NCBI RefSeq assembly: GCF_000315625.1
Contig: NW_005434650.1
Span: 400,005-464,004 of the forward strand
Source of the DNA: Guillardia theta CCMP2712
Lineage: Eukaryota; Protista; Cryptophyta
Direction: 5' to 3'
Length of the DNA: 64,000 nt
Part shown: positions 4,092 to 25,726 of the stretch, piece by piece
Numbering within the stretch: the first letter of the stretch is position 1
Layout: every line of letters begins with the position of its first letter
The notes under the pieces: generated by a model
Databases searched by the model: none
Told to the model about the DNA's origin: nothing
What the model saw: the letters and a program-made list of their open reading frames with translations, nothing else
Made by a program: the position numbers and the translations under genes

Positions 4092-5150
4092 TTACTTCTT
4101 GTACACGAGGTAGCAGGCCGTCGATATGGTAGCAAGGATGGCGCCGATGCCATTGGGTCCCCACACGTAGATGTCACTGATTGCCCGTCCGTACATGAAC
4201 CAGAACAGACCGTTAAGAATGCCTGCGTCACAACATGAATCAGCAACAGTGATTGAGCATGCCGCATGCCTTACCAGCCACGGTCAGCAAGGGATCGATG
4301 GATTGAGCGTTCTTAGTCTTGATCACCGTAGAGATAGTTGCGAGAGGTGAGCAGTAGTAGATCATCAACAGCGCAATCCCAACTCTGCCGATCACTTCCT
4401 TGGCAGGGATGCTAAAAACTCCCGAGAAGGCAGCGATGATGGCCAAGCCGATGGCAGAGGCATAACTAACAAACGACTTCATGATGGATGACTTCTGCTG
4501 GACGCTGCCCATGGCATGGCCGGTGTAGGTGAAGAAAAGTCCAAGTGACAAGCCCACGATGTTAGGGATGACAATCCAGACGTTCTGTTGTGCCAGTGAG
4601 AGACCCAGTGGAAGATTAGATAAAATGCAAGTGAACCTTCACAAGAAGTGCATAGGTGAGCCAGGCAGCACAGTTTCCGCACTGCGCTGGATAGGGCTGG
4701 AGATTCAACTCGCCCAGGGCCCCATCCTTCTGAGCCTTGAGAACAGCTGGGAGGGGTGAAGAGAACATTGCAATGGAGACGAGAAGCCCACAAAGAGGAG
4801 CCAACGTCTTAAGAACAAGATCGCTGGACAAAACTGAAGCTTTCGTTGCTGTAGCTCCTCCTCTGTATCCAAAAACACATTTCAGCACAAAGGAACATGA
4901 GAAGCAGGTCAAACCGGAGGTTGCTTCGAGAGAGTACGAATTGCTTTTGCTTGAGGGAAATACCAAATGGTCTTGAAAAACTTGGCTTCCAGGTAGTAGC
5001 CTTTGAACCAGAAAGTCCGATGGAAGTTGAGACCAATGCATTTGCACTGAGAGGAAGAAGCAAGGTGCAGAGAAGCAGAAACGACCTGCAAGTGGGAACG
5101 TGAGAGCAGTCATAGGTCATTGCCGCCCAGATTTGACAGCCAGGCATCAT
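4092..5150 (-). CDS. SWEET: SWEET (MtN3/saliva) sugar transporter with signal+transit-like N-terminal extension
   Basis: Two MtN3 repeats: MFSSPLPAVLKAQKDGALGELNLQPYPAQCGNCAAWLTYALL and YYCSPLATISTVIKTKNAQSIDPLLTVAG-ILNGLFWFMYG..DIYVWGPNGIG; stop at 4092-4094; start codon uncertain. Confidence 0.9.
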
Positions 5151-5561
5151 TCTTCTCTCTAAAAACAATTACACAGACAATGAGAGGATCTTAAGTGGCT
5201 GTAGATCTCAACGGCAAAGAGCAAGGTTTCAATCGCGCTGCCAACTTGTGTGCCTCTGTAAGGAGAAACTTCTAGTTTCCCTCGAGGTAACATGCTCAAT
5301 CTTCAACAAGTCGCTGCCATGAAATTTCCCTAGTCATCTCAGATTTTCCGCTCTTGTCTCCCTATCCACCCCTCCTCTCCGCTTCCCTCCCCTCCCCTCC
5401 ATCTTTTACCTTCCTGCCATGGTAACGGGGAATAATCGATGGGTTTCAACCGTGGGGTAGGGTGAATCTGCCACCGGTATTTATTCCTACAAAGAGATCT
5501 TGATATGGGGGGTGAGACAGCTTGGTAGGCCCTCATTTTTGGGGCAACTTGAACAGTAAAA

Positions 5562-5990
5562 AGGCCGTCGCTTGCGTGGTTGTAGCAACGGTTTTCGCTG
5601 CCTCCTTCGTTTCCTAGTATTTTATTGAGGCGGGTTTGTAGGCTTTATCCTCGTCCTCCTTTGCATCTGAAGCTGTCGATGGAGGTAAGTGGAAGCACAG
5701 GCGCCTGTTATCTCAAGATACCGCAGGATCATTTTTCAAGGATTGACGAGCAATGCACAAAGATTGAGAAACGACTTGCAGAAGACAAGCAAAGTATGTG
5801 CCGCCGCGGATCGATCGAGCGATCGCCGACAAATGTGATGATTTCTAGACGAATGGTGATGATTTGTACAGGTCTAGAGGGGAAAATTGTGGGTCTTGCA
5901 ACAGAAATCGTCGAAAATAATCAGAGTATACCGCAACGACTCGAGTGGTCTTCGAACAGAAATCGTCGAGAATAATCAGAGTATACCGCA
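5562..5990 (+). pseudogene. Internally deleted direct copy of the 10282-11810 region (putative nuclease locus)
   Basis: 5562-5663 matches 10282-10383, then jumps to match 11561-11810 (LKLSMEVSGSTGACYLKIPQDHFSRID...); ~1.18 kb missing. Confidence 0.85.
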
Positions 5991-6057
5991 ACGATAGATC
6001 GAGCGAGATACGAAAGCCCGCGACGCGAAAAGGATGGCTGATCTCGCCATCTCCACA

Positions 6058-7085
6058 TCGATGACCTGCATATCGCTAGCCCCGCACGACCTGCACGCGT
6101 CTCGCAGGACGCGGGCGAGGGTCGTCGTACTCGAGCTTGACGATGCAGTCTCCCTCCTGCACGCCCTTGGCATGAGCCTCGGAGTCAGCCTTGACACGGC
6201 TGACGCGGATGGGGACGGCGAAGGCGTCTCGCTCTCGAAGGCGAGCACAGATGCCCCAGCTCTCTGACTCGAAGTCGACAACCAGCTGCCTTGTCTTGTG
6301 CATGCTGGTCACAGCAAGGAGTCAAGAGCAGAGCAGCAAGGAGACGACACGGGAAGATGACAGCTCAGATATCGCCACAAAGACCTCGCTGAGACCCACA
6401 CGTACAGACAAGCGCTCAAGCGAGGCTAGAGCGCAGGGACGAGCGGAGGAGGAGGAGGATGTGTCAGGCGAGAGCGAAGGGGTGTGGGATGACGAGATGA
6501 GTGCAGAGTCACGCCCACACACGCAGGCAGCGGCCCGGACACATCATCGGACAGGTCAGCCAGCAGCTCGGGCGAGAGCAAGATAGCACATCAAGGTACT
6601 CTCTAACAACTACGTGCGGGCAAGAGCTGGCCGAGGGTGAGCTAGAAGGGCGTCAAGAGTCCAAGGGAGCAAGCCGGCCGTGCCAGCACTCTCGGGTCAG
6701 GGAAGCGCAGGCGAGTAGAGGACGGGAGGACGGGAGCGTGGCAAGGGGGGAGGTGGGTGGGGGCAGGTTTGTGGGTGAGGACAGGAAGGGACTGAGGTTG
6801 ATGATGGAAGGCTGTGGGTTTCGCCGTACCCGTGGGTTTGACGGGAATGGAAGGGAAGGAAGGGGGTGTGGTGGGGTGACCCTTCTTATCTAGTGCACTC
6901 TGTTCGAAAACAAGGCGGAGAGACAGGGGTGGGTGGGGGCAGGTTTGTGGGTGAGGACAGGAAGGGACTGAGGTTGATGATGGAAGGCGGGGAGTGACGA
7001 TGACGGGGAGGAATGGGCGACATAGATCACGCCATGGTGTAGGGCGACCTTGATACGCAATAGAGGAGAGCAAGATGTAGCAATT
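6058..7085 (-). pseudogene. Truncated, frameshifted third copy of the PDZ-TFIIB unit (upstream region + 5' ORF)
   Basis: Reverse complement of ~12159-13275; ~68-bp deletion at 6120, ~19-bp deletion at 6480, replaced segment ~6752-6812; ends within the zinc ribbon. Confidence 0.9.
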
Positions 7086-7121
7086 GCTTGCGGTGTGTAT
7101 GATCCATGTACAATATGTACA

Positions 7122-7127
7122 TTTATT
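7122..7127 (-). terminator. Putative polyadenylation signal AATAAA of the intact PDZ-TFIIB gene
   Basis: tttatt on + strand, ~57 nt downstream of the stop at 7184. Confidence 0.4.
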
Positions 7128-7183
7128 CAATCAAAATCATCTCTCACCCCTGCCATGGAGATGCCTGACAGGAGGCGCTGCGC

Positions 7184-8263
7184 TCATCTTCTCCCTCCCA
7201 CCGTCACCGCTGGCTTGGACTCTCGCTGACAGTCCCTCGCCTTGATCCTCCCCTGCAGATACGACGCCCCGACCCCGCACGCCTCTGCCACCTTCCTCAA
7301 GTCCGCCTTCCCCCCCGCTCTCCCTGCCCACACCTTGTAGATCAGCTCGGCGGCTACAGTAGCGGGAGCGCCCTGGATGTGGCTGCCTGACTGCAGCCTG
7401 ACGGCGTCTGCAGCATAGCTCTGCGGGAGGTCGAGCCTCCCTAGGAAGCGATCGAGCAGCTGGTCGTAGGCCTGCGGCCTCGTGCCCTGGTTCCGCTTCA
7501 TGGCGCATCTCGAGACTTTGTAGAAGGCCGCCCCCGTCGCCTGACAGACCTCCCGCATCGTGCGAGACTGGCCGAGCTCCTTGCAGGCCAGAAACAGAGC
7601 TGCAGACACGTACACAACCAGCCTGCTCTTGTTGCGAGGCATGCGGGCTGCGATCCCCAAGGCCTCCTGCCGGACCTGCTGGGTGACCTCGAGCTTCTCG
7701 CCGAGCTCGCTGATCAGGCCTCTGAGCTCGGCCATGTAGGGGTCTGGGACGTCAGCGGCGCCGAGCTTAGCCCTCTTACTGCAGCCGGCGCGGGCGTCGT
7801 CGCCATCGACGGGTCTCTTGGAGCCAGCAGCTGGGCCGCTGCTGCCCCCGGCGCACGTCGGGCTCTTGGGCCCCTCTACCAAGACGAACTGGTAGGGAGA
7901 CGAGCGATGGACGACGCCGCAATGCGTGCAGACGACGATCGCGTCTCGCTCGATGACCTGCATGTCGCTAGCCCCGCACGACCTGCACGCGTCTCGCAGG
8001 ACGCGGGCGAGGGTGACCCTACAGCTGCCCCCCGCGAGCAGCTTGGGGTGTCTGCCGTCGTGACGGACGTACTCTACGGTGTCGTCGTACTCGAGCTTGA
8101 CGATGCAGTCTCCCTCCTGCACGCCCTTGGCATGAGCCTCGGAGTCAGCCTTGACGCGGCTGACGCGGATGGGGACGGCGAAGGCGTCTCGCTCTCGAAG
8201 GCGAGCACAGATGCCCCAGCTCTCTGACTCGAAGTCGACAACCAGCTGCCTTGTCTTGTGCAT
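7184..8263 (-). CDS. Intronless TFIIB-related factor with N-terminal PDZ-like domain (complete copy)
   Basis: Zn ribbon CRSCGASDMQVIERDAIVVCTHCG; cyclin repeat 1 (SAALFLACKELGQSRTMREVCQATG); repeat 2 (LDRFLGRLDLP..PATVAAELIY..DLRKVAEACGVGASYLQGRIK); N-terminal VSRVKADSEAHAKGVQEGDCIVKL is PDZ-like; first ATG 8263. Confidence 0.85.
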   Translation of the reverse strand: MHKTRQLVVDFESESWGICARLRERDAFAVPIRVSRVKADSEAHAKGVQEGDCIVKLEYDDTVEYVRHDGRHPKLLAGGSCRVTLARVLRDACRSCGASDMQVIERDAIVVCTHCGVVHRSSPYQFVLVEGPKSPTCAGGSSGPAAGSKRPVDGDDARAGCSKRAKLGAADVPDPYMAELRGLISELGEKLEVTQQVRQEALGIAARMPRNKSRLVVYVSAALFLACKELGQSRTMREVCQATGAAFYKVSRCAMKRNQGTRPQAYDQLLDRFLGRLDLPQSYAADAVRLQSGSHIQGAPATVAAELIYKVWAGRAGGKADLRKVAEACGVGASYLQGRIKARDCQRESKPAVTVGGRR

Positions 8264-8876
8264 GCTGGTCACAGCAAGGAGTCAAGAGCAGAGCAGCAAG
8301 GAGACGACACGGGCAGATGACAGCTCAGATATCGCCACAAAGACCTCGCTGAGACCCACACGTACAGACAAGCGCTCAAGCGAGGCTAGAGCGCAGGGAC
8401 GAGCGGAGGAGGAGGAGGATGTGTCAGGCGAGAGCGAAGGGTCAGGTCAGTAGTCTAGGGGTGTGGGATGACGAGATGAGTGCAGAGTCACGCCCACACA
8501 CGCAGGCAGCGGCCCGGACACATCATCGGACAGGTCAGCCAGCAGCTCGGGCGAGAGCAAGATAGCACATCAAGGTACTCTCTAACAACTACGTGCGGGC
8601 AAGAGCTGGCCGAGGGTGAGCTAGAAGGGCGTCAAGAGTCCAAGGGAGCAAGCCGGCCGTGCCAGCACTCTCGGGTCAGGGAAGCGCAGGCGAGTAGAGG
8701 ACGGGAGGACGGGAGCGTGGCAAGGGGGGAAGGGAACGAGCGTTGCCATAGAGAGTCCCCTTCCCTAGGTAATTATAGCCTGCCTTGACTGCGTTTGTGG
8801 GTTTCGCCGTACCCGTGGGTTTGAGCGGAATGGAAGGGAAGGAAGGGGGTGTGGTGGGGTGACCCTTCTTATCTAG
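7243..8876 (-). repeat. Left arm of 1634-bp inverted repeat (partner 12350-13983)
   Basis: Reverse-complement match from tgatcctcccc.. (7243) to ..cttatctag (8876); only a handful of substitutions seen. Confidence 0.95.
8770..8777 (-). promoter_or_regulatory. TATA-like TATAATTA upstream of PDZ-TFIIB (mirrored at 12449-12456 on +)
   Basis: Isolated AT-rich octamer in a GC-rich upstream region, ~500 nt before the ATG; replaced in the broken third copy. Confidence 0.3.
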
Positions 8877-9209
8877 CTAGTGCACGCTATCGAGAACAAA
8901 GGGGTCCTTGGACTTGAGCCTGGTTTTGATTTTGGGTTTAGTTCAGCACGTGCGACAGGGCATGGTTGAATGGAGATTGGGGCACGGTCGACAAAGGAGA
9001 TAGACAGCACGACAGAGTGGCATGAATGGATTGATTTATGATTACTATCAAAGGATATAGATTAGTAATGATTCAAAGACACAAATGTCCGTTTTGATTG
9101 TTGAGATGCAATGTTTCAGCAGTTGTACATATTAATCAAGAAAAACATAGATCCCATGTTTTAAGACCTTCAAGTAGTTACATGCGATTTATGAATGACG
9201 TTTTTACAG

Positions 9210-9521
9210 GCTCAAGAAGGTTTCTGCATAAGGCATCCAAAGTAGAATGCTGCCTAAAGAGACGACAGGAGAAGTAATTGACAGTGCATGTTTGAAGGCC
9301 CTCGGCTCTCAACAATCCACCGTGATCGATGAGGAATACATCCCTGCGAAGAAGGCAGGGAAGGTTCTCAACAAGTTCCTAGAGGAAGATGATCAACAAA
9401 CGTACATAGACTCTGACAGGTGAGCAAATGTGCATCTGATCATGCTCCTTGTCTGCCGTTTTGACACCATTTCAGAAAAACGATTCTCTCCACTCTCCAT
9501 GCATCAATCATGAAACAATAA
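9210..9521 (+). pseudogene. 3' fragment of an unidentified spliced gene with an in-frame stop
   Basis: Acceptor tttttacag; LKKVSA*GIQSRMLPKETTGEVIDSACLKALGSQQSTVIDEEYIPAKKAGKVLNKFLEEDDQQTYIDSDR; gtgagc..ttcag intron; KTILSTLHASIMKQ*. Confidence 0.4.
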
Positions 9522-10512
9522 TTTGTAAATTATCAAGAACATCAGAATGATGAATGACCTTTATCTCTTGATGTATTTTACTCTTTCGATCCCTCCTGCC
9601 TATCCCACGCACAGAAATACTTGTGCTAAGCTCACGGTTTCTTTAAGGGTGACGAATATCAGCAAAAGTTGTAAAACTATTCGAAATTCTGGAACACATG
9701 ACATCTCCGGGGGCACTGTGACACAATTCAAGGTCTGTTGTTGCATATCATAACTGTCGTTGGACTTCACTGCTGTGAACAAGCAATCTTACTCATCTGT
9801 GGCCCTCATCGTATGTTCGAGCAAACTTTCCTTCACATGAACCGACAAAATTTTCCAGATCTACAGACATCACAACGAGTGCCATGATCCCTCAACAGGG
9901 ACAGCACAACTGCCGCAACTCGAATGAATTTTCAAGTCTCATAAGAATTCCATCAGACTCTAATCAGAATGAAGATGGGATCAAATGAGGATGAGATTGA
10001 TTGAAGGATTATGACGATTGATGGTAGGGTTATGACGAGATACAGGCATTTTTATGAGTTAATTGATGATGACACCGACAGTAGAAAAGAGAGAGGGAAG
10101 GACGCGAGGTCTCCACAGGATGCTTTCAGTCGCAGTACTGTCCGTTTGTTGCAGCACTTTCATCACATATCCTGGAACCTGTACTTGAGTCATTGTCTCG
10201 TCTCCGATGATTGTAAAACATCCTTTCACTCTCTTCTCCATTTGCTAATACCTTCTTGGTCCATTACTGACTTTAGCGTACAGGCCGTCGCTTGCGTGGT
10301 TGGAGTGCCGGTTTTCGCTGCCTCCTTCGTTTCCTAGTATTTTATTGAGGCGGGTTTGTTGGCTCTATCCTCCCCCTCCTTTGTTTGCTTCGGTTTGTCC
10401 TTCTTTTTCAGTCAATAAAGTACGGACTTTAGCGTCGTGAGTTGGCGCCAAATCTGAGGCCACAGACTTTCCTTGAACAGTGGGGAGGACCCCCCATCTG
10501 TTACTACCATAG

Positions 10513-11736
10513 CTTTATTCAACTAATACCTTTCTGGTACTGATAAGTTTACTTCTGTTTGTTCAAGTTGCCCCTAATCCTACCAAGTTCCCGGAAAGCG
10601 CCAGGGAAAGCGCAAAACTGACTCAGGTGATGTTGGTGAAGGACGTGTCGAACAACATGAGCGGCCTCGGAGAAGGAGATGAAGGGAGCCTCGGAGAGAA
10701 GGGAGAGGGAGAGAGGAGAGAAGGAGAGGGAGAGGGAGACGGAGAGAGAAAGAGCGGCCTCGGAGAAGGAGAGGAAGGGAGCCTCGGAGAGAAGATGAGA
10801 GAGGGAGAGGGAGAGGGAGATTCTGTGAGACTCGACAGCATACGAGAAGTGTATTCCGACGACGATTTTGAGAACATGGTGTATTCTGGCGCTCCTGCAG
10901 ATCTGCCTGCAGTGAGGAGAGAGATGCTGAAACAGAGCACCATGGCTGCTGACCGAATGAAAGCAAACGGATGGTCCAACACTTTGCCGCTGGAGCACTT
11001 GAATCGCGTCGGGCAGAAGGTAGGCCTGCCACAGGTTTCAATCAAAAATAAGAATCATAATGACATAGCGCCGAACGAGGGTGGGCCCAAGGCTGGGGAT
11101 AGCTTTCAGGCAGATCTATGCGTCAAGTTCGAGCAAGACGTCGCTCTGCACTATTTCTTCAGAGGGTTGATCGAAAATTTTGAAACTGACGTAAAACCTG
11201 TCGCCGCAACTTATCCGAACCATCCGAATTTCAACGATGTTCGCATCAGACAAGGACAATACATGTGTTTCGAGATTACCCTGTCGTTGAAAAAAATTTT
11301 GAGCAAAATTCATCAGCTTGTACGGCTCTACTCTGCTAATGGTCTCAAAGACGACTTTATTGGAAAAAGAGCAGAAATTGCAGTCATTGGTCTTATCGTT
11401 AGCGGGGATAGGAAGAAGTTTGAAGATACAGCCGAGAAGCTCAGATCTTTCTTCCAAAGAGCTAGCGAAGACGAAGTTCTGTCCAAGTACATGATCGATA
11501 AAACGATTCCGATTTTCCTTTGTCGTGTAAATCGCAAGAATCTACACACCCGGGTGATGGATCTGAAACTGTCGATGGAGGTAAGTGGAAGCACAGGCGC
11601 CTGTTATCTCAAGATACCGCAGGATCATTTTTCAAGGATTGACGTGCAATTCACAAAGATTGAGGAACGACTTGCAGAAGACAAGCAAAGTATGTGCGAC
11701 AAATGTGATGATTTCTTGACGAATGGTGATCAGTGA
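10513..11736 (+). CDS. Hypothetical protein, putative PD-(D/E)xK restriction-endonuclease fold + C-terminal coiled coil; hydrophobic N-terminal segment and G/E-rich repeat
   Basis: Frame open from 10513 (FLVLISLLLFVQVAP); FQADLCV..CFEITLSLKKILSKIHQLVRL..IAVIGLIV resembles a D..ExT/K..QL nuclease core; probable 42-nt in-frame intron 11581-11622 (gtaagt..ccgcag). Confidence 0.5.
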   Translation, partial: LYSTNTFLVLISLLLFVQVAPNPTKFPESARESAKLTQVMLVKDVSNNMSGLGEGDEGSLGEKGEGERREGEGEGDGERKSGLGEGEEGSLGEKMREGEGEGDSVRLDSIREVYSDDDFENMVYSGAPADLPAVRREMLKQSTMAADRMKANGWSNTLPLEHLNRVGQKVGLPQVSIKNKNHNDIAPNEGGPKAGDSFQADLCVKFEQDVALHYFFRGLIENFETDVKPVAATYPNHPNFNDVRIRQGQYMCFEITLSLKKILSKIHQLVRLYSANGLKDDFIGKRAEIAVIGLIVSGDRKKFEDTAEKLRSFFQRASEDEVLSKYMIDKTIPIFLCRVNRKNLHTRVMDLKLSMEVSGSTGACYLKIPQDHFSRIDVQFTKIEERLAEDKQSMCDKCDDFLTNGDQ

Positions 11737-12349
11737 TTTGTACAGGTCTAGAGGAGAAACTCGTGGGTCTTCGAACAGAAATCGTCGAGAATAATCAGAG
11801 TATACCGCAAGGAAAGATGGAGCTACGAATGGTGATCAGTGATTTGTACAGGTCTAGAGGAGAAACTCGTGGGTCTTCGAACAGAAATTATCGAGGCGAT
11901 GAAGAGCCAGCGGCAGGCGATCACGACAGAAAGGATTATGTCACCTGAAGCTGCGGTCGGATTCTTTGCCGCCTCGGTGATTGGAAGCTTGCTCTTTTCT
12001 CGTTTTCGTTCCAACTAGCCAGCGATTGGTCTTCCATAGTATTCTTTTCTCTTTTTGTAAACCATATCTGGCGATAGATGTTGTGCCATAGGCAGCTTAT
12101 TTGGTCCATTCGTTACTGGAACTTACTTGGCGGATCGGAGCGAAATACGAATAGTAATAATTGCTACATCTTGCTCTCCTCTATTGCGTATCAAGGTCGC
12201 CCTACACCATGGCGTGATCTAGGTCGCCCATTCCTCCCCGTCATCGTCACTCCCGCCTTCCATCATCAACCTCAGTCCCTTCCTGTCCTCACCCACAAAC
12301 CTGCCCCCACCCACCCCTGTCTCTCCGCCTTGTTTTCGAACAGAGTGCA

Positions 12350-13983
12350 CTAGATAAGAAGGGTCACCCCACCACACCCCCTTCCTTCCCTTCCATTCCC
12401 GTCAAACCCACGGGTACGGCGAAACCCACAAACGCAGTCAAGGCAGGCTATAATTACCTAGGGAAGGGGACACTCTATGGCAACGCTCGTTCCCTTCCCC
12501 CCTTGCCACGCTCCCGTCCTCCCGTCCTCTACTCGCCTGCGCTTCCCTGACCCGAGAGTGCTGGCACGGCCGGCTTGCTCCCTTGGACTCTTGACGCCCT
12601 TCTAGCTCACCCTCGGCCAGCTCTTGCCCGCACGTAGTTGTTAGAGAGTACCTTGATGTGCTATCTTGCTCTCGCCCGAGCTGCTGGCTGACCTGTCCGA
12701 TGATGTGTCCGGGCCGCTGCCTGCGTGTGTGGGCGTGACTCTGCACTCATCTCGTCATCCCGCACCCCTAGACTACTGACCTGACCCTTCGCTCTCGCCT
12801 GACACATCCTCCTCCTCCTCCGCTCGTCCCTGCGCTCTAGCCTCGCTTGAGCGCTTGTCTGTACGTGTGGGTCTCAGCGAGGTCTTTGTGGCGATATCTG
12901 AGCTGTCATCTGCCCGTGTCGTCTCCTTGCTGCTCTGCTCTTGACTCCTTGCTGTGACCAGCATGCACAAGACAAGGCAGCTGGTTGTCGACTTCGAGTC
13001 AGAGAGCTGGGGCATCTGTGCTCGCCTTCGAGAGCGAGACGCCTTCGCCGTCCCCATCCGCGTCAGCCGCGTCAAGGCTGACTCCGAGGCTCATGCCAAG
13101 GGCGTGCAGGAGGGAGACTGCATCGTCAAGCTCGAGTACGACGACACCGTAGAGTACGTCCGTCACGACGGCAGACACCCCAAGCTGCTCGCGGGGGGCA
13201 GCTGTAGGGTCACCCTCGCCCGCGTCCTGCGAGACGCGTGCAGGTCGTGCGGGGCTAGCGACATGCAGGTCATCGAGCGAGACGCGATCGTCGTCTGCAC
13301 GCATTGCGGCATCGTCCATCGCTCGTCTCCCTACCAGTTCGTCTTGGTAGAGGGGCCCAAGAGCCCGACGTGCGCCGGGGGCAGCAGCGGCCCAGCTGCT
13401 GGCTCCAAGAGACCCGTCGATGGCGACGACGCCCGCGCCGGCTGCAGTAAGAGGGCTAAGCTCGGCGCCGCTGACGTCCCAGACCCCTACATGGCCGAGC
13501 TCAGAGGCCTGATCAGCGAGCTCGGCGAGAAGCTCGAGGTCACCCAGCAGGTCCGGCAGGAGGCCTTGGGGATCGCAGCCCGCATGCCTCGCAACAAGAG
13601 CAGGCTGGTTGTGTACGTGTCTGCAGCTCTGTTTCTGGCCTGCAAGGAGCTCGGCCAGTCTCGCACGATGCGGGAGGTCTGTCAGGCGACGGGGGCGGCC
13701 TTCTACAAAGTCTCGAGATGCGCCATGAAGCGGAACCAGGGCACGAGGCCGCAGGCCTACGACCAGCTGCTCGATCGCTTCCTAGGGAGGCTCGACCTCC
13801 CGCAGAGCTATGCTGCAGACGCCGTCAGGCTGCAGTCAGGCAGCCACATCCAGGGCGCTCCCGCTACTGTAGCCGCCGAGCTGATCTACAAGGTGTGGGC
13901 AGGGAGAGCGGGGGGGAAGGCGGACTTGAGGAAGGTGGCAGAGGCGTGCGGGGTCGGGGCGTCGTATCTGCAGGGGAGGATCA
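12350..13983 (+). repeat. Right arm of 1634-bp inverted repeat (partner 7243-8876)
   Basis: Reverse-complement identity with left arm; similarity to the third copy extends to 12159. Confidence 0.95.
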
Positions 13984-14021
13984 GAATTTGCAAGGTTGTG
14001 AAGGAGGGGGTAGGGGCTTAG
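12963..14021 (+). CDS. Second PDZ-TFIIB copy; 3' tail replaced by read-through into flank
   Basis: Protein identical to 7184-8263 except CGVV>CGIV and the tail after YLQGRI (RICKVVKEGVGA vs KARDCQRESKPAVTVGGRR). Confidence 0.8.
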   Translation: MHKTRQLVVDFESESWGICARLRERDAFAVPIRVSRVKADSEAHAKGVQEGDCIVKLEYDDTVEYVRHDGRHPKLLAGGSCRVTLARVLRDACRSCGASDMQVIERDAIVVCTHCGIVHRSSPYQFVLVEGPKSPTCAGGSSGPAAGSKRPVDGDDARAGCSKRAKLGAADVPDPYMAELRGLISELGEKLEVTQQVRQEALGIAARMPRNKSRLVVYVSAALFLACKELGQSRTMREVCQATGAAFYKVSRCAMKRNQGTRPQAYDQLLDRFLGRLDLPQSYAADAVRLQSGSHIQGAPATVAAELIYKVWAGRAGGKADLRKVAEACGVGASYLQGRIRICKVVKEGVGA

Positions 14022-14706
14022 GGATGGTCAGATGGGGCTTAGCTATGGCCAGAATCATGACATTAGTGGTAGGTTTTCAATGATAAATGACAACTTGCCT
14101 TCTTTTTAATTTCCATCTGCTTCTTATCCTCTGTGAAGGGCGAGGGGGAGCTGCTGGACGATGATGATGGGGAGGAAGGAAAGTTAGAAAAAGGGAGGGA
14201 GGAGTTTAAAGTAGGGAAAGAGAGGGAGGAGAGGAGCAGGAGCAGGAGCAGGAAGAGGAGGAGGAGGAAGAGGAGTGTGCTGGGTCTCTTATCAGTGTGG
14301 ATTGCTGTTTCAACGTCAAATTGTTTACTTTGAGGCAGATTGATGTACATCCACTGACTTCTTGCGGTCCTTAGCAGTCATCGAAGGTACCATTACCCCT
14401 TTGACCTGCCTCACAGACAGGCGGCTGTCCCTTGACCTAGCGATCCCACGTGATCACTACGGGACGCGTGCTCCTCCTACCAGCTCCCACCAGCACTCCT
14501 TCACCCTCCCCATGTCAGACTCCCGCAGTCCCTGTCTGCTGCTTCCTCTTCCTCGCTTGCTGATCTTGTGGAGGTGGAGACAACCTTCCTGCTCCACCCC
14601 TCTCCAGCTCCAGCCCGCCTCGAGCATCTACATCTTCGAGCGGCTCCTACGAGGACAGCAGTGGATCGCGTCCAAAAGGTTCGTTCTTCGTTCTCTCTCC
14701 CGACGC

Positions 14707-17273
14707 TCAGAAGCCAAACTTGTGCGCCAGGTTGCGAACTTGCTCCCAGAAGACCAAGCACAGGACCTGGAGGAGAGGATGAGCTCAAGGGCGGGAGAAA
14801 AGGCGGAGCAGGAGGAAAAGGTGCAGAAGCAGAAACAGGAACAGGAGCAGGAGCAGAAGGTGCAGGGCAGGAGCAGGAGCAAGAGCGGGAGCAGGAGGCT
14901 CACAGTGTGGGGTCCAAGACGAGCATAGTGTGCTGTCCATCCCTTAAAGAATCCTCCTGCAAACAGGTACGTTATTCTTAGATCTGTAGTCTCCTCTTCC
15001 TGCTCGTGCTCGTGCTCGTCCTCCTCCTTTCTCACCAAGCCCCTCAGCTCTCGCAGTCTTGATGAAACAATCCACAGGACCCGAGTAAATTCTCTTGGCG
15101 CCCTGAGGCTGCGTGTAGAGCCTCGTGCTCACCTGAAGAAAAGGGGAGGAGAGGACGAGGGTGAGGGGAAGATAACGGAAGGCGAGGAGAGGAGGAAGAG
15201 AAGGGAAAAAAAAAGTAGGAACAGTTGGCGGCGAAGGAGATAAAAGAAGGCCGAAGTCGCATGAAGTTAGCAGAGCGAGGGAGCCGGAAGGAGGTGGGAA
15301 ATGGTTGTAGGGAGATTGGAAGGAGAAGAGGCGGAGAAGGTCTTACGACATCGAAGGGGTTCATGATGGTAGTAACCACAATTCCCGACACCTTGTACAT
15401 CAGTCAAGCAGCCTCGGATCCCTCCTGCCTCCTCAACCATCGATGAACTGAAGTGACACAAAATTCCATCATGAAGATAACCCAGCGCAAGGATTCGCTG
15501 CTTCACCTGCATGCTGCCGTGTCAGCTCTCGTCTCAGTTCCCTCCTCCTCCTTCTCCTCCCTCCCACCCCCACATCTTTCTCCTCCTCCTCCTCCTCCTC
15601 CTCCTCCTCCTCCTCCTCCTCCTCCTCCTCCTCCCACATCTTTCTCCTCCTCTTCCTCCTGGCCTTCCCTCCCTTCGTCTCCATGACCTCATCCTCGTCC
15701 TCGCTTTGCCCTTGCTCTCGGTCGTACCGTCTCATAGGTGGCCAGCTGCGAGGCGGATCCTACCATGACGCGAGGAACGGCTCCATCGATTCCCCTGAAC
15801 CAGCCAGACATTCCCTCCTCTTTGTAGACCTGAACGACATATAAGGGAATGATTGCTGTCGAGGTGGGTCCAGGGGCAAAAGAGAAAGAGAGAGAACGAG
15901 GGAAGCTCGTGAGTAAGAGGTCTAGGTAGAGATCGAGCAACAGCAGTAGCCTTGTAAAGGTGGTGGAGGAGAAGAAGCAGGTTGAGCAGGAGCAGGAGCA
16001 GGAGGGGCAGGAGCAGGTGGGAAGAGAGGGAGGAAGTAGAACGAATCTCACCTTCACGAGACCATCGACCATTCCCTTGTAGTCGTATTGGTTAGCATGG
16101 AGAGTCTGAATTCAAAGAGGAAATTTTCAGACACAGATAAGGAAAAATGAAAAGGTTTGAGAAGATGATTTCAAGAGAGTCAACAGACCCCGCTGTTCTT
16201 GGCGATCTTTGACATGGCTTGCAGCCTGGGAAGGGAAGCTGAGAGACGCGAGGGCAGGAGACGAGTCGAGTCACCTGCATTTGACCATGAAGAACGGCGA
16301 ACCGATGACCTGCCGACGGGATGAGTTGAAGGGGCAGGAGGAGGAGGAGCAGGAGCAGGAGGAGGAGCAACAGTCCGCAGAAGCTTCATACTCACCGCTC
16401 CGATGGCACCAGAAGTAGCTCCCGCCCCGATCTGCCTGAGAACGTTCATGGGGCTGTGGCTGCCGTCATCGTTGAGGAGCCTGAGAGAGCATGAGGGAGA
16501 GATCACAGGGTAACCCTGGAGAGCAGACAGCAACTTCATCTGTACCATCGGAGTACTTTCGTCTGCTCTTTCACTCCCTCCCCCACCAAGAACAAGGAGC
16601 ATGCCTCATCCTCTTACCCCATCCTTCCCCCCAACTCGCGTCTCCTCCATTCCACATCTCCTCGTCCGTTGCTCCTCACCGCTTCAGGGTTGGGTATATC
16701 CCCAATCGTGCGCCGTTCATGAAGAACTGATACACCATCCCTGCTCCCAACCGTCATCCTCCCCCGCACGATCTCCAGCACCTCAGCAGGATCGTCTACC
16801 TGGCACCAACCCCTTCTGGATAGCAAGGACCCCCTCCTCCCTGCGCCAGCCACAGCACGTAAGCTCCTCCTCAGCCACAGCACGTCAGCTCCTCCTCAGC
16901 CACAGCACGTCAGCTCCTCGAACTTCCTCATCCTACCTGGGAATCTTCATGAAGGCATCGATGAGTCCCTTGTACACGCGCCCTTGAGCTGCGCTGTTGG
17001 CCATCTCGCCCTGCAGCTGTAGCCTGGTCTTCACGACCTGCACCTCTCGTCAGCCGGAGCTTGAGGTCAGCAGGTCCACGAGTCACCTCGAAGGGGTTGC
17101 TGAAGACGCAAGCAAGGGATGCCGCCGTTCCTCCCGTGATCTGCGTTGAGGGTCATGCCAGCTCGATGCACTTCAACAACGCGCACAATGTCCGTCATCA
17201 ACTTCCTCTGGGTTGACTTCACAGGAGGAGGCTCCAAATCTTCGTCGAAGGTGATCTCGTCGTTGTTCGCCAT
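14707..17273 (-). CDS. Mitochondrial carrier (SLC25), OAC1/SLC25A34-35-like oxaloacetate carrier
   Basis: Three signature repeats after splicing: NPFE-VVKTRLQLQGE, SPFFMVKC-RLQA, NPFDVV-STRLYTQP; FFKGWTAHYARLGPHT-VLCLVFWEQVR..F*. Confidence 0.9.
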
Positions 17274-17522
17274 CTGATGCGGAGCACGTTAGCAAGATGG
17301 AAAAATTCATGTTTCCTCCTCATTCTGGGAGACTATGTGTAGACGAGGAAGACACACTAGCTCTCTCCCTCCCTCCCTCCCTCCCTCCCTAGGTCAGGAA
17401 GCTTGACGAGACTACTGCTCGGCGTGGATCACGGAAGAAAGACTGGAGTCTCAATGTTTCAAGAAGATTAAAATCCCAAGCTTCTTGGTTTCTCTAAACC
17501 ATTCCTCTTGCAGACTCCCTTC

Positions 17523-17622
17523 NNNNNNNNNNNNNNNNNNNNNNNNNNNNNNNNNNNNNNNNNNNNNNNNNNNNNNNNNNNNNNNNNNNNNNNNNNNNNN
17601 NNNNNNNNNNNNNNNNNNNNNN
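17523..17622. other. Assembly gap (100 N)
   Basis: Run of N. Confidence 1.
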
Positions 17623-17854
17623 TCCTTATCCCCTTCGTGTCAATCCTCGATGTCATCCTTATCCTCGCTCTGTTCCTCCTCGTCTCCTCATGGTCGCCCT
17701 CCTCCACGCCCTCCTCCTCCTCCTCCTCCTCCACCACCACCAACACCACCACCACAGTTTCATCCCCAACTCCATCTTTCCCCTAAGCATTTAAAGGCTC
17801 CCTCCACTCCTCATTCCCCTCTTGTATTTCATCTCCCTCATACCCAGCATACCA

Positions 17855-20599: not shown

Positions 20600-20753
20600 T
20601 CATCTGTTGAGTTGAGATTCCAAAAGATGTACCTGACACCCATGGCTCTTCGTCAAGGTAACGAAGTGCTTCATGTACCTACGAAGATCAACAAACTTGT
20701 TGCAGGCAGAGCTCAAGAAGCAAACAGCTCCACAGGTCAGACATAAGTGACTA

Positions 20754-20844
<91 letters not shown>

Positions 20845-21353
20845 TTCTGCTGCCTTTATTGATATCGAATTCATTCATATTCCTTCTGCTGCTGTTTCTG
20901 CTTCTGTTACGGGGATTTGCAACTTTTGTTGTATTTCTTGTCTCATTGCTTTTGACTGTCAAATGCCAGACTCTTTCGACCGATGATATTTCATTCTTTT
21001 CTGCCAGTGGCAGATGATCAAACAATCCCAAAATTTTGGGAGTAATAAATGACGAATTGAAAGTTGGGGAGATATTTTTTGAGAGTTTAGATGTAGAATG
21101 TTGTTGATGAGAGAAGAATGACGATTCCATCTTTGTTCTTTCTCACATGTTCATTCAGCTGGTTCTCACTTGTTTGTTCATATGTACAAATCTCATCACA
21201 TTAATTATCATCGTCGTCGTAACATCTGAGAAAGTTTGGTCAAGGAGAGAATTCATCAAAAAAGTCACCTCGTGGATAGATGGAGGGTTGGCACTGTACT
21301 TGCTTGATCCCATCTTGAACTCTCTGCTGTTAGTAACTTTGTCAGACTTCTTA

Positions 21354-23371: not shown

Positions 23372-25331
23372 GCACAACTAGAACACAAAATCAAAAAATG
23401 AGCAAGAGCAAGAGCATCATCAGCGTCGCCTTCACTCAGACCTTGAGGTCAACGGTGACAACATCCCCCATGTTGAAGCGCGAGAAAGGAACTTTGTCCG
23501 TCGGAAGAGTTTTGATGACATGCGGACCGTTCATCAGGAGCCCGGAGGGAGAAGACCAGAAGAAGGCGTGATCGAAGAAGCACTTGGTATCCCACCTACA
23601 CCAACATGTCACGCGCACAAGTGGACGGGATGTGGTTGTGAAGTGAGGGAGATGGGAAAGTTCGGCACTTTCTCATGTCTATAGCGAGAGGTGACTTTTT
23701 GTGTTCTGCTAGATGGAGGTATGATTGTGGATGGAGATATCAGGGTTGATAGAAGCATCATTGCTGCTGAAAGTCTTCACTGGCTTTCTTCTGGCCATCC
23801 TACCTTCGATCGAGCTCGTCTGCCAGTCTCTCTGCAAGAATCAAACTTGCAAGCAACAAGTCAACATCGCATGTCTCATCATCAGTCTGCGAGGTACCCG
23901 ATGTACATGTTGCCGTCCCTGTGAATGACTTCAAACTGCCACTGACAATGACCTGAAATACTTGGTCCGATGTTCTGTGTAGGGGAAAGAAAGGAAAGCG
24001 CATCAAAAACCAAGTCAGCGTTCGTAAGTCATTCAGGAAACAACAAGAATCATGTTGAAATCAACTCACCATGCCGAACCCGGAAGCGAACACAGGGATG
24101 TCAGACGTTTTCATGATCACGTCGCCGCCACGATGATTGGTACGGAACTGTGTGCGCATGAGGGAGGAAGAGGAGAGAGGATGAAAGACAAAGAGCAACG
24201 ATGGAAGGAGGGGAAAGGGAAGATGGCGAGGAGAGAGGCAATGACGATGACGATTCCATCTTAGGGAAGAAAAGAGTAGAGTTGGGAAGGGAGGGATGGA
24301 AGGAGACGGGATGGAAGGAGACGGGATGGGATGGGAGGAGATGGGATGGGAGGGATGGCCGTTTAATAAAGCTTGCTCACTCCTGCATTCTTGTCAATTC
24401 GCATGTGACCTGACCCGGCAAGACTTACTCGGGGGTCGTCCGTAAAGGATGCCAACGTCCAACGAGATGTCACCTTGCCAGAAGCTTTCAAAGAGAGCAA
24501 GTGGCAGCAGAGGAGGAGGGAGGAGGGAGGAGGGAGGAGGGAGGAGGGAGGAGGGAGGAGGGAGGAGGGAGGAGGGGAGGAGGGAGATAGCTACCGCTCG
24601 CATCCTTGTCTCCTTCCATCTCGTCCCATCCCTGCCGTCATGGTCACCCCACTCCCCTCCTTTCCTCCCCTCAGCTCTTCTCATCGTGCTCACCACCCAG
24701 ACTGACTGATCGAACTTGGGCCCTTCACTTTCCTTCTCCTCGATGCTCAGCTGTGAGACTCTCCTCTCTGCTGCTTTGGGCTTCTTCTGGGTTTGCATAT
24801 CCTCCTCCCCCAAGTTGACATGATGCTGGCCCTGCCAGTAGCTCAGGATTTCGCGAAGTCCGCACGCAATTCCCGTCATCGTCCAACCATCCCATCCCAC
24901 GCATCGTCAAGGTTGTCTACATGCTCTCCCATCTTCATGCTGTGCCCCTTGTCCCCTTCACAGATTTTAGCCCACTACTTCTTCCTCTCCTCTTCTGCCT
25001 CTTGTAACCTCCTGCTCCCTGCTCCCTGCTCCCTGCTCCCTGCTCCCTGCTCCCTGCTCCCTGCTCCCTGCTCCCTGCTCCCTGCTCCCTGCTCCCTGCT
25101 CCCTGCTCCCTGCTCCCTGCTCCCTGCTCCCTGCTCCCTGCTCCCTCCTCCCTCCTCTCATATCCTCTCCTCTCTTCATACCTCGATCGTCTTCTCCCCC
25201 CCTCCTGCCATCCGGCCGGCAGCAAGTCCCCATTGCTTCCTGCTCATGTCGCTGGTGTCGGAGCAACTGCTAGGTGGGAATGTGTGGGGATGAGGGAGTT
25301 GGGGCTGTATGAGGGACGTCCCTGTGGCCAT
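20600..25331 (-). CDS. Multi-exon protein with SPRY/B30.2-like domain (could be more than one gene)
   Basis: Spliced GPSISGHCQWQFEVIHRDGNMYIGYL..HAFFWSSPSGLLMNG..FSRFNMGDVVTVDLK fits SPRY; later ILKALRRMRYDVDETCEFL is UBA/CUE-like. Confidence 0.5.
20756..20842. repeat. (CCTGCT)n hexamer microsatellite
   Basis: Visible tandem. Confidence 0.95.
23301..23371. repeat. (ATC)n microsatellite
   Basis: Visible tandem. Confidence 0.95.
25011..25145. repeat. (CCTGCTC)n heptamer tandem (also 26165-26205)
   Basis: Visible tandem of about 19 units. Confidence 0.95.
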
Positions 25332-25357
25332 GGATGCTCTAGGAGGATACGACAGGT

Positions 25358-25427
25358 AGAGGAGGAGGAGGAGGAGGAGGAGGAGGAGGAGGAGGAGGAG
25401 GAGGAGGAGGAGGAGGAGGAGGAGGAG
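25358..25427. repeat. (GAG)n microsatellite in intergenic purine tract
   Basis: Visible tandem. Confidence 0.95.
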
Positions 25428-25726
25428 ATGGAGGAGGAGGAGGAGATGGAGGATATGGAGGAGGAGGAGGACATGGAGGAGGACGAGGAGGACAGGTGGG
25501 GGAAGGAGAGGGCAAACCAGATGAGTTGGGAAGTATGGGAATAGGCGGGCAAAGAGAGGGAGGGAGGGATGAGAGGATGAGCGAGAGGAGGAGGAGGAGG
25601 AGGAGGAGGAGGAGGATGAGGATGAGGAGAGGAGAGGAGAGGAGAGGAGAGGAGAGGAGGAGAGAGGAGGAGGAGGAGGAGAGAAGAGGAGAGAGCTGTC
25701 AGTCATTGTTCAGCACTCATGTAAAG

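What the first reader, a model, noticed from the sequence alone, without database searches (positions are those of the whole stretch)
7243..13983. 1634-bp near-perfect inverted repeats carrying outward-facing TFIIB genes around a nuclease-like cargo
Seen: arms 7243-8876 and 12350-13983 differ at only a few positions and enclose 3.47 kb holding a putative nuclease gene and gene debris; both TFIIB ORFs read outward. Inference: either a foldback/TIR-like selfish cassette that encodes its own initiation factor plus an endonuclease, or a recent inverted segmental duplication. The left gene continues past the repeat boundary (intact 3' end, AATAAA) while the right is clipped at 13983, which favours duplication over clean TIRs.
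Basis: partly seen in the sequence, partly recalled or inferred. Interest (0 to 1): 0.8.

Follow-up and report, generated by a model that had tools for sequence, protein, structure and literature searches.

The report
Recent inverted duplication of TFIIB-like gene
In the nuclear genome of the alga Guillardia theta, a 1.6-kb piece carrying a lineage-specific TFIIB-like gene has been copied in reverse a few kilobases away (with a third, broken copy beside it); this is an ordinary local duplication, not a mobile element with a nuclease.

Summary
The repeat is real. Arms 7243-8876 and 12350-13983 are 1634 bp with 5 mismatches and 3473 bp between them, inside one gap-free contig of Guillardia theta CCMP2712 scaffold JH992988.1. 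Each arm holds about 613 bp of upstream DNA and all but the last 13-20 codons of an intronless gene. That gene has a PDZ-like N-terminus, a zinc ribbon and a two-cyclin TFIIB core. Its only detected relatives are one G. theta paralog and one Hanusia protein.

The "nuclease" (GUITHDRAFT_151982) belongs to a multi-copy family found almost only in G. theta, with at least 12 genes on about 10 scaffolds. It has an uncharacterised globular domain, a coiled coil and a C-terminal hydrophobic tail. No profile or fold search supports a nuclease.

At four paralog loci the two genes never co-occur. There are no target-site duplications and no transposase, and both breakpoints are sharp and lie inside the coding sequence.

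The best reading is a recent, complex local segmental duplication. One caveat: independent short-read assemblies recover only the right copy's junctions and carry a different sequence left of 10219.

The parts
7243..8876 (-). Left arm of the inverted repeat. It holds 1021 bp of the TFIIB-like coding sequence plus 613 bp upstream.
   Evidence: 1634 nt with 5 mismatches to the right arm
12350..13983 (+). Right arm of the inverted repeat.
   Evidence: Both junctions are also present in independent contigs L001, L006, L004 and L007.
7184..8263 (-). Left TFIIB-like gene (359 aa, P0005), intronless. Its last 19 codons and its stop codon (7184-7242) lie outside the arm; the 3' region with AATAAA (7122-7127) lies further downstream.
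   Evidence: Pfam TFIIB repeat at 23 bits; profile and fold matches to TFIIB
12963..14021 (+). Right TFIIB-like gene (352 aa, P0001). It differs from the left copy by V117I inside the arm and by a different 12-residue tail outside it.
6058..7085 (-). Third, partial copy (P). It equals the reverse complement of 13276..12159, that is the right copy's upstream region (including 190 bp beyond the arm) plus the first ~314 bp of coding sequence. It has 19-bp and 68-bp deletions (the latter shifts the frame) and a 61-bp replacement, so it is a pseudogene fragment.
   Evidence: alignment A4
5562..6004 (+). Decayed partial copy of the spacer gene. It joins 10282-10383 to 11558-11823 at 84-92% identity, so it is older than the arm duplication.
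10630..12018 (+). Spacer gene GUITHDRAFT_151982 (412 aa in the NCBI model, with short introns). It has an acidic low-complexity N-terminus, an uncharacterised globular domain, coiled-coil repeats and a C-terminal hydrophobic tail. It is a member of a multi-copy family found almost only in G. theta.
8877..10219 (.). Left part of the spacer. It is AT-richer (42% GC) with no recognisable gene. Independent assemblies diverge from the window to the left of 10219/10220.
10282..10383 (+). Short dispersed repeat, also present at 5562-5663 and at L010:13428-13497 (91-97% identity).

Best explanation
The structure is a recent, local, complex segmental duplication in the nuclear genome of Guillardia theta CCMP2712.

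The parental unit is most likely the right-hand one: spacer-family gene, then the TFIIB-like gene, then the mitochondrial-carrier gene. It was copied twice in reverse orientation into the interval between the SWEET gene and the spacer gene.
- One copy (the left arm) took 1634 bp. This was 613 bp of upstream DNA and all conserved codons of the gene. It picked up a new 19-codon tail and a 3' end with AATAAA from the insertion site, so it is a complete second gene.
- The other copy (P) is truncated and frameshifted, so it is a pseudogene.

No element-encoded machinery is involved. The copies are by-products of break repair or of replication template switching; that mechanism is inferred, not shown.

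The consequence is two nearly identical, divergently transcribed copies of a Guillardia/Hanusia-restricted TFIIB paralog (PDZ-like domain + zinc ribbon + two cyclin folds). The spacer gene is a bystander from an unrelated, locally expanded gene family. As with any 1.6-kb inverted repeat at 99.7% identity, the arms can be expected to exchange sequence and occasionally to flip the spacer. This too is inferred.
For: - Geometry and identity of the arms.
- Homology ends abruptly at all four arm ends, with no degenerate extension above shuffled controls and no target-site duplication.
- The outer breakpoint lies inside the coding sequence, 13 or 20 codons before the stop.
- A third copy has different breakpoints and internal deletions.
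- An older (84-92%) fragment of the spacer gene shows repeated local duplication. Tandem and head-to-head arrays of that family occur at other loci.
- Neither partner gene travels with the other. The TFIIB paralog locus L003 has no spacer-family gene, and L008, L009 and L010 have no TFIIB-like gene within 10 kb.
- No transposase, integrase, capsid or nuclease domain was found in any ORF tested.
- No viral-contig relatives were found.
- The right copy's junctions and tail are recovered in three other read sets.
- L-type and R-type bases at 12762 and 13311 both occur in independent contigs. With a haploid nucleus (PMC4007541), this fits two real paralogous copies.
Against: - No independent contig shows the left copy's junctions or its protein tail.
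- Independent de Bruijn contigs run unbroken through the right arm's ends, which is unexpected if a second copy with other flanks is present at equal depth.
- Those contigs carry a different sequence left of 10219/10220.
- The whole G. theta genome could not be searched at the DNA level here, so unannotated further copies are not excluded.
- The duplication mechanism itself is inferred.
Confidence: 0.72

Rival explanations
1. Assembly artefact. The left arm (and perhaps P and 8877-10219) is misplaced or falsely duplicated in the 2012 Sanger-era reference, and the true locus has a single TFIIB-like gene.
For: - Independent contigs (L001, L006, L007, L004) pass through both ends of the right arm without a break.
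- They have another sequence (X) left of 10219/10220.
- P0005, the left-copy protein, is on record only from the NCBI assembly.
Against: - The region 5000-17522 is one gap-free contig.
- The left arm has its own unique flanks (7086-7242 and 8877-10219) and five private differences.
- Two of those differences (12762, 13311) are seen as alternative bases in independent read sets. In a haploid nucleus that implies two copies.
- Assemblers do not normally create inverted copies with unique spacers.
Confidence: 0.1
2. Older duplication kept alike by gene conversion, like a palindrome. The arms are much older than 0.3% divergence suggests and are homogenised by frequent inter-arm conversion.
For: - All three reference copies share C at 12617 where every independent contig has G.
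- The arm coding sequence has GC3 of 0.82 against 0.57 in its single-copy paralog, as GC-biased conversion would produce.
- Independent contigs are mosaics of L-type and R-type bases.
Against: - There is no decayed homology beyond the arm ends.
- The pseudogene copy P is just as similar as the arms.
- GC3 values of 0.75-0.89 occur in other G. theta ORFs.
- The shared C at 12617 is equally explained by duplication after the strains split.
Confidence: 0.13
3. A foldback or TIR-type selfish cassette that carries its own initiation factor and an endonuclease and moves as a unit.
For: - Long near-perfect inverted arms surround a gene of unknown function.
- The spacer-gene family is multi-copy and dispersed.
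- Its domain has nearly invariant acidic, Lys and Gln residues (FQAD .. FEITE .. K..Q), which is not incompatible with a divergent nuclease.
Against: - No target-site duplication; the arm ends lie inside the coding sequence.
- The two genes are never neighbours at four other loci.
- Only one other TFIIB-like paralog exists in the proteome.
- No transposase, integrase or nuclease profile hit in Pfam, PDB, PHROGs, PADLOC or NCBIfam.
- The element is far smaller than, and lacks the hallmark genes of, the polinton-like viruses known from cryptophytes (PMC12220804).
Confidence: 0.03

Closest known systems
Inverted segmental duplications and small palindromes with a spacer, as produced by break repair or replication template switching (for example DUP-TRP/INV-DUP structures and sex-chromosome palindromes). 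This comparison rests on established knowledge, not on a test here.
   Same: Two arms above 99% identity in inverted orientation around a unique spacer. A gene is duplicated within the arms. The breakpoints are sharp with no target-site duplication. An extra partial copy lies nearby. Inter-arm conversion and spacer inversion are to be expected.
   Different: The scale is very small (1.6-kb arms). The copy order is minus, minus, plus rather than direct-inverted-direct. One breakpoint creates a new C-terminal tail and 3' end for the copied gene.
TFIIB family (TFIIB, Brf1/Brf2, plant pBrp, giant-virus TFIIB)
   Same: A CxxC..CxxC zinc ribbon followed by two cyclin folds. The family profile aligns over both repeats of human TFIIB (E 1e-7). 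The top fold matches are TFIIB chains in Pol II pre-initiation complexes.
   Different: Only about 15-20% identity to canonical TFIIB. The Pfam score is at or below the curated cut-off for the arm copies (23.0-23.1 against 23.6 bits). The ribbon-to-core linker is low-complexity and not conserved. There is an extra conserved PDZ-like N-terminal domain. Relatives were found only in Guillardia and Hanusia. Viral TFIIBs are no closer than cellular ones.
TIR/foldback DNA transposons and polinton-like viruses of cryptophytes (PMC12220804)
   Same: Inverted repeats bracket a few genes in a cryptophyte nuclear genome.
   Different: There are no target-site duplications and no transposase, integrase, polymerase or capsid gene. 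The size is 6.7 kb, not 14-40 kb. The repeats are themselves the gene, and their ends fall within its coding sequence. The gene pair does not recur elsewhere.

Membership tests
Inverted segmental duplication | Two long copies of high identity in inverted orientation on one chromosome | tested here: met
   1634 nt, 99.69% identity, 3473-nt spacer, one gap-free contig
Inverted segmental duplication | Breakpoints unrelated to gene or element boundaries, with no target-site duplication | tested here: met
   The outer breakpoint lies inside the coding sequence. The flanks CGCCT| and |GAATT are not a direct repeat. There is no extended homology beyond the arm ends.
Inverted segmental duplication | Both copies physically present in the organism (read depth, spanning reads) | not testable with these tools
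   No reads were available. Independent contigs support only the right copy's junctions, although both allele states occur.
TIR / foldback transposon | Target-site duplication flanking the terminal repeats | tested here: not met
TIR / foldback transposon | Transposase, or multiple dispersed copies with the same termini | tested here: not met
   No Pfam hit in the spacer or arm ORFs. No other copy in the 64-kb window or in four paralog loci. The whole genome was not searchable at the DNA level.
Polinton-like virus / Maverick | Capsid genes, packaging ATPase, polymerase or integrase; 14-40 kb | tested here: not met
   None of these was found and the unit is 6.7 kb; definition taken from PMC12220804
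TFIIB family (arm gene) | N-terminal zinc ribbon with four Cys | tested here: met
   C93, C96, C112 and C115 are invariant in all relatives. The Pfam Zn_Ribbon_TF hit itself is only weak (E 0.24, in the Hanusia protein P0002).
TFIIB family (arm gene) | Two cyclin-fold repeats forming the core domain | tested here: met
   The profile aligns to human TFIIB residues 92-287 (E 1e-7). Model core pLDDT is 70-89 and Foldseek's top hits are TFIIB. The Pfam TFIIB repeat scores 34-36 bits in the relatives and 23 bits (cut-off 23.6) in the arm copies.
TFIIB family (arm gene) | Conserved B-reader/B-linker and binding of TBP and polymerase | tested here: inconclusive
   The linker (residues ~123-173) is low-complexity, poorly conserved and modelled at pLDDT below 50. 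Binding cannot be tested here.
PD-(D/E)XK or other nuclease (spacer gene) | Significant profile or fold similarity to a nuclease family | tested here: not met
   Pfam, PDB sequence profile, PHROGs, PADLOC and NCBIfam give only coiled-coil noise. The single-sequence model has pLDDT 54 and no Foldseek match below E 0.04.
PD-(D/E)XK or other nuclease (spacer gene) | Catalytic acidic/Lys motif on a beta-sheet core | tested here: inconclusive
   Conserved FQAD .. FEITE ..

The most novel reading that the evidence does not exclude
The unit behaves as an invertible or self-homogenising module. The 1.6-kb arms recombine, flipping the spacer gene between two orientations and exchanging sequence. The pairing of a lineage-restricted PDZ-TFIIB paralog with a gene whose conserved D..E..K..Q domain is a new nuclease-like fold would then be functional, either selfish or regulatory, rather than accidental.
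Probability: 0.04. Interest if true: 0.6.

Novelty: new member of a known kind. Interest (0 to 1): 0.25.

Why it matters
As a structure, it is an ordinary young segmental duplication. It matters mainly as a caution for annotation and assembly of the G. theta reference, which lists three TFIIB-like gene models here where one is a fragment.

Two by-products have modest interest:
- A Guillardia/Hanusia-restricted TFIIB paralog with a conserved PDZ-like N-terminal domain, present as a single-copy gene (GUITHDRAFT_135112, whose model is truncated) and as this freshly amplified divergent copy.
- A dispersed gene family found almost only in G. theta, with at least 12 members and an uncharacterised conserved domain.

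If the left copy proves specific to CCMP2712, the locus would also be a dated example of how a new gene 3' end is acquired at a duplication breakpoint.

Tried and rejected
- **Rfam and tRNA scans of the window:** nothing found.
- **Bacterial promoter/terminator scan:** irrelevant for a eukaryote and empty.
- **Viral origin:**
  - The IMG/VR scan with the TFIIB-like alignment found no relative. The spacer-family alignment was too variable to scan.
  - The BFVD fold search gave giant-virus TFIIBs no better than cellular ones.
- **JGI metagenome scans:** the protein-pattern scan and a 34-nt arm-end pattern both came back empty.
- **Exact-protein look-ups of ORFs spanning reference-specific junctions or the P copy:** none on record. 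One coordinate slip was corrected.
- **Foreign composition:** arm GC3 of 0.82 is high but within the range of other G. theta ORFs, so it was rejected as evidence of transfer.
- **Splice-junction explanation for the alternative sequence X left of 10219/10220:** rejected. There is no AG acceptor and X is absent from the 10 kb upstream.
- **RNA origin of the independent contigs:** rejected. They keep the 42-bp intron, which the paralog alignment supports as a real intron.
- **Literature:** searches for the run and project accessions and for G. theta TFIIB or segmental duplication found nothing relevant.
Full report
**Source of the window.** Exact-protein look-ups place the window on Guillardia theta CCMP2712 nuclear scaffold JH992988.1 (assembly GCA_000315625.1, 809,438 bp). 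Locus L005 equals window 2963-24021 at 100% identity, so window position 1 is about record position 400,005. It is eukaryotic nuclear DNA of a cryptophyte alga. It is not human and not a listed agent.

**The observation.**
- The inverted repeat is exactly as described: 7243-8876 against 12350-13983, 1634 nt, 3473 nt apart.
- There are five mismatches. Four lie in the 613 bp upstream of the gene. One lies in the coding sequence and changes codon 117 (Val in the left copy, Ile in the right).
- The interval 5000-17522 has no N. The only gap in the window is 17523-17622.
- The two long ORFs read outward.
- NCBI annotates, from left to right:
  - a SWEET gene (4092-4768, minus strand);
  - a 95-aa fragment (5976-6303, minus);
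  - the 359-aa left gene (7184-8263, minus);
  - a 412-aa hypothetical protein (10630-12018, plus);
  - the 352-aa right gene (12963-14021, plus);
  - a mitochondrial carrier (14707-17273, minus).

- There is a third copy, P (6058-7085), in the same orientation as the left arm.
  - It equals the reverse complement of 13276..12159. So it carries the right copy's upstream region, including 190 bp that lie beyond the arm, and the first ~314 bp of coding sequence.
  - It has a 19-bp deletion, a 68-bp frameshifting deletion and a 61-bp replaced segment. It is a pseudogene fragment whose breakpoints differ from those of the arms.
- Immediately left of P, 5562-6004 is a decayed piece of the spacer gene. 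It joins 10282-10383 to 11558-11823 at 84-92% identity, so it is an older event.
- The locus has therefore been rearranged several times.

**The arm gene.**
- Pfam gives a TFIIB repeat just under threshold for the arm copies (23.0-23.1 bits against a 23.6 cut-off) and clearly above it for the relatives (34-36 bits).
- A four-sequence profile aligns over both cyclin repeats of human TFIIB (residues 92-287, E 1e-7).
- An AlphaFold model is poor overall (pLDDT 54) but good in the core (70-89 over residues ~174-345). Its best Foldseek matches are TFIIB chains in Pol II pre-initiation complexes. Giant-virus TFIIBs match no better.
- Four Cys of a zinc ribbon are invariant. Before the ribbon lies a conserved ~60-residue region with weak PDZ similarity.
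- Two word-index searches of 5.8 billion proteins found only three proteins: the window's own product, Hanusia phi (55% identity) and G. theta GUITHDRAFT_135112.
- GUITHDRAFT_135112 is annotated as 234 aa, but its locus L003 holds a full-length intronless 337-aa ORF that includes the PDZ-like part.
- Hanusia is closer to that paralog (65%) than to the arm gene (55%). The arm gene is therefore the more divergent member of a small, lineage-restricted TFIIB-like family.

**The spacer gene.**
- The word search found nothing for it. The exhaustive HMMER search found 20 relatives.
- Of the ten looked up, seven are G. theta hypothetical proteins. With their cluster mates and this gene they make at least 12 annotated genes on about 10 scaffolds. 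The other three are unnamed metagenome proteins (two ENA, one JGI/IMG).
- The family shares the motifs FQAD(L/M)C, Y-I-C-F-E-I-T-E, K-x(3)-K-I-x-Q-L, I-A-A-x-G-I-I-V-N-G and I-P-x-F-L, followed by a coiled coil. The NCBI model of this member ends in a hydrophobic tail.
- Pfam, a PDB sequence profile, PHROGs, PADLOC and NCBIfam return only coiled-coil noise.
- A single-sequence model was too poor to use (pLDDT 54; best Foldseek E 0.05).
- 'Nuclease' is therefore unsupported. It is not strictly excluded, because the conserved Asp, Glu, Lys and Gln residues could fit a divergent fold.

**Test of the cassette idea.**
- The TFIIB paralog locus L003 has no spacer-family gene within 10 kb. Spacer-family loci L008, L009 and L010 have no TFIIB-like gene within 10 kb.
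- Those loci show the family in a tandem pair (L009) and in a head-to-head multi-domain pair (L010). The family duplicates locally by itself.
- No ORF in the arms or spacer has a transposase, integrase or capsid domain.
- The bases flanking the arms are not a direct repeat.
- Homology stops abruptly at all four arm ends. The best local alignments beyond them are no better than shuffles. The one exception is a 4-bp CTAG duplication followed by a further 5-bp match (TGCAC) at the left inner junction.
- The outer ends fall inside the coding sequence, 13 codons (right) or 20 codons (left) before the stop.
- All of this fits a segmental duplication, not a transposon or a polinton-like virus. The latter are known from cryptophytes but are 14-40 kb with hallmark genes (PMC12220804).

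**Which copy is parental.**
- Both ORFs keep every conserved column. Only the non-conserved tails differ.
- The right copy's protein, with its tail, is on record from ENA and Logan assemblies of three other runs (ERR2281808, ERR2281809, SRR23967302). The left copy's protein is on record only from the reference.
- Contigs L001 and L006 (5.56 kb) match window 10219-15434 and 10219-15563 at 99.8-99.9%, through both ends of the right arm.
- I therefore take the right unit as parental. The left copy would be a derived copy that acquired a new tail and an AATAAA-bearing 3' end at its insertion site.

**An unresolved point.**
- Those independent contigs should break at the arm ends if a second copy with other flanks were present at equal depth. 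They do not.
- Left of 10219/10220 they carry 215-342 bp (X) that is absent from the window. X has a 109-codon open frame that is 61-77% identical to a stretch upstream of the closest spacer-gene paralog (L008:8864-9107).
- The contigs are DNA, not RNA. They keep the 42-bp intron that the paralog alignment supports.
- On the other hand, the contigs are mosaics of the left-type and right-type bases at 12762 and 13311, and the nucleus is reported to be haploid (PMC4007541). That argues for two copies in those samples too.
- At 12617 all three reference copies have C, while every independent contig has G. This fits either duplication after the strains split or concerted evolution.
- I cannot decide between a strain difference, a mixed population and a reference mis-join without reads. 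This is why my confidence is 0.72 rather than higher.

**Composition.**
- The arm coding sequence has GC3 of 0.82, against 0.57 for the paralog and 0.45-0.62 for most neighbouring genes.
- Other G. theta ORFs reach 0.75-0.89. So this is not evidence of foreign origin. It is at most a hint of GC-biased conversion.

**Verdict.** The repeat is real and far beyond chance. It is best explained as a young, complex, local inverted duplication of a lineage-specific TFIIB-like gene, with an unrelated family gene caught in the spacer. It is not a selfish cassette, and the nuclease label does not hold. As a structure it is an ordinary kind of event. The PDZ-TFIIB paralog and the uncharacterised gene family found almost only in G. 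theta are minor novelties noted in passing.

**Limits.**
- No tool held the G. theta genome as searchable DNA, so copy number outside the window rests on protein searches and four fetched loci.
- No reads were available.
- The duplication mechanism is inferred.

Noticed in passing
window 7184-8263 and 12963-14021; L003:9692-10705: The TFIIB-like proteins carry a conserved N-terminal PDZ-like region (residues ~25-90) ahead of the zinc ribbon. This PDZ + TFIIB architecture was found only in Guillardia and Hanusia. The NCBI model GUITHDRAFT_135112 (234 aa) is truncated; the locus holds a 337-aa ORF.
   Followed up: partly
L001:1-342 and L006:1-215, against window 10219/10220: Independent assemblies replace everything left of 10219 with a sequence (X) that is absent from the window. 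X has a 109-codon open frame related to L008:8864-9107, next to the closest spacer-gene paralog. This may be a strain difference or a reference mis-join.
   Followed up: partly
window 5562-5663, 10282-10383; L010:13428-13497: A 70-102-bp sequence recurs at 91-97% identity at two places in the window and on another scaffold. It is a short dispersed repeat of unknown nature.
   Followed up: no
L010:7331-11377; L009:7178-10780: The spacer-gene family forms a head-to-head pair of multi-domain genes (five domain copies) on one scaffold and a tandem pair on another. The family is found almost only in G. theta and has no known domain.
   Followed up: partly
window 43831-55950 (minus strand): A dynein heavy chain is encoded in three very long ORFs. 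Its N-terminal part has TIG, filamin and Kelch-propeller domains in front of DHC_N2.
   Followed up: no
window 12963-14021 and 7184-8263: The arm coding sequence has GC3 of 0.82 against 0.57 in its paralog. This is high but within the range seen in other G. theta ORFs.
   Followed up: yes
window 12252: The right copy in the reference lacks one C of a C-run that is present in copy P and in both independent MEGAHIT contigs. It is either a private 1-bp deletion or a reference base error in non-coding DNA.
   Followed up: no
window 14130-15680, 17640-17760, 20700-20850, 25300-25680 and others: Many GAG/CTC and GCA/TGC trinucleotide-type low-complexity tracts occur, in genes and between them.
   Followed up: no
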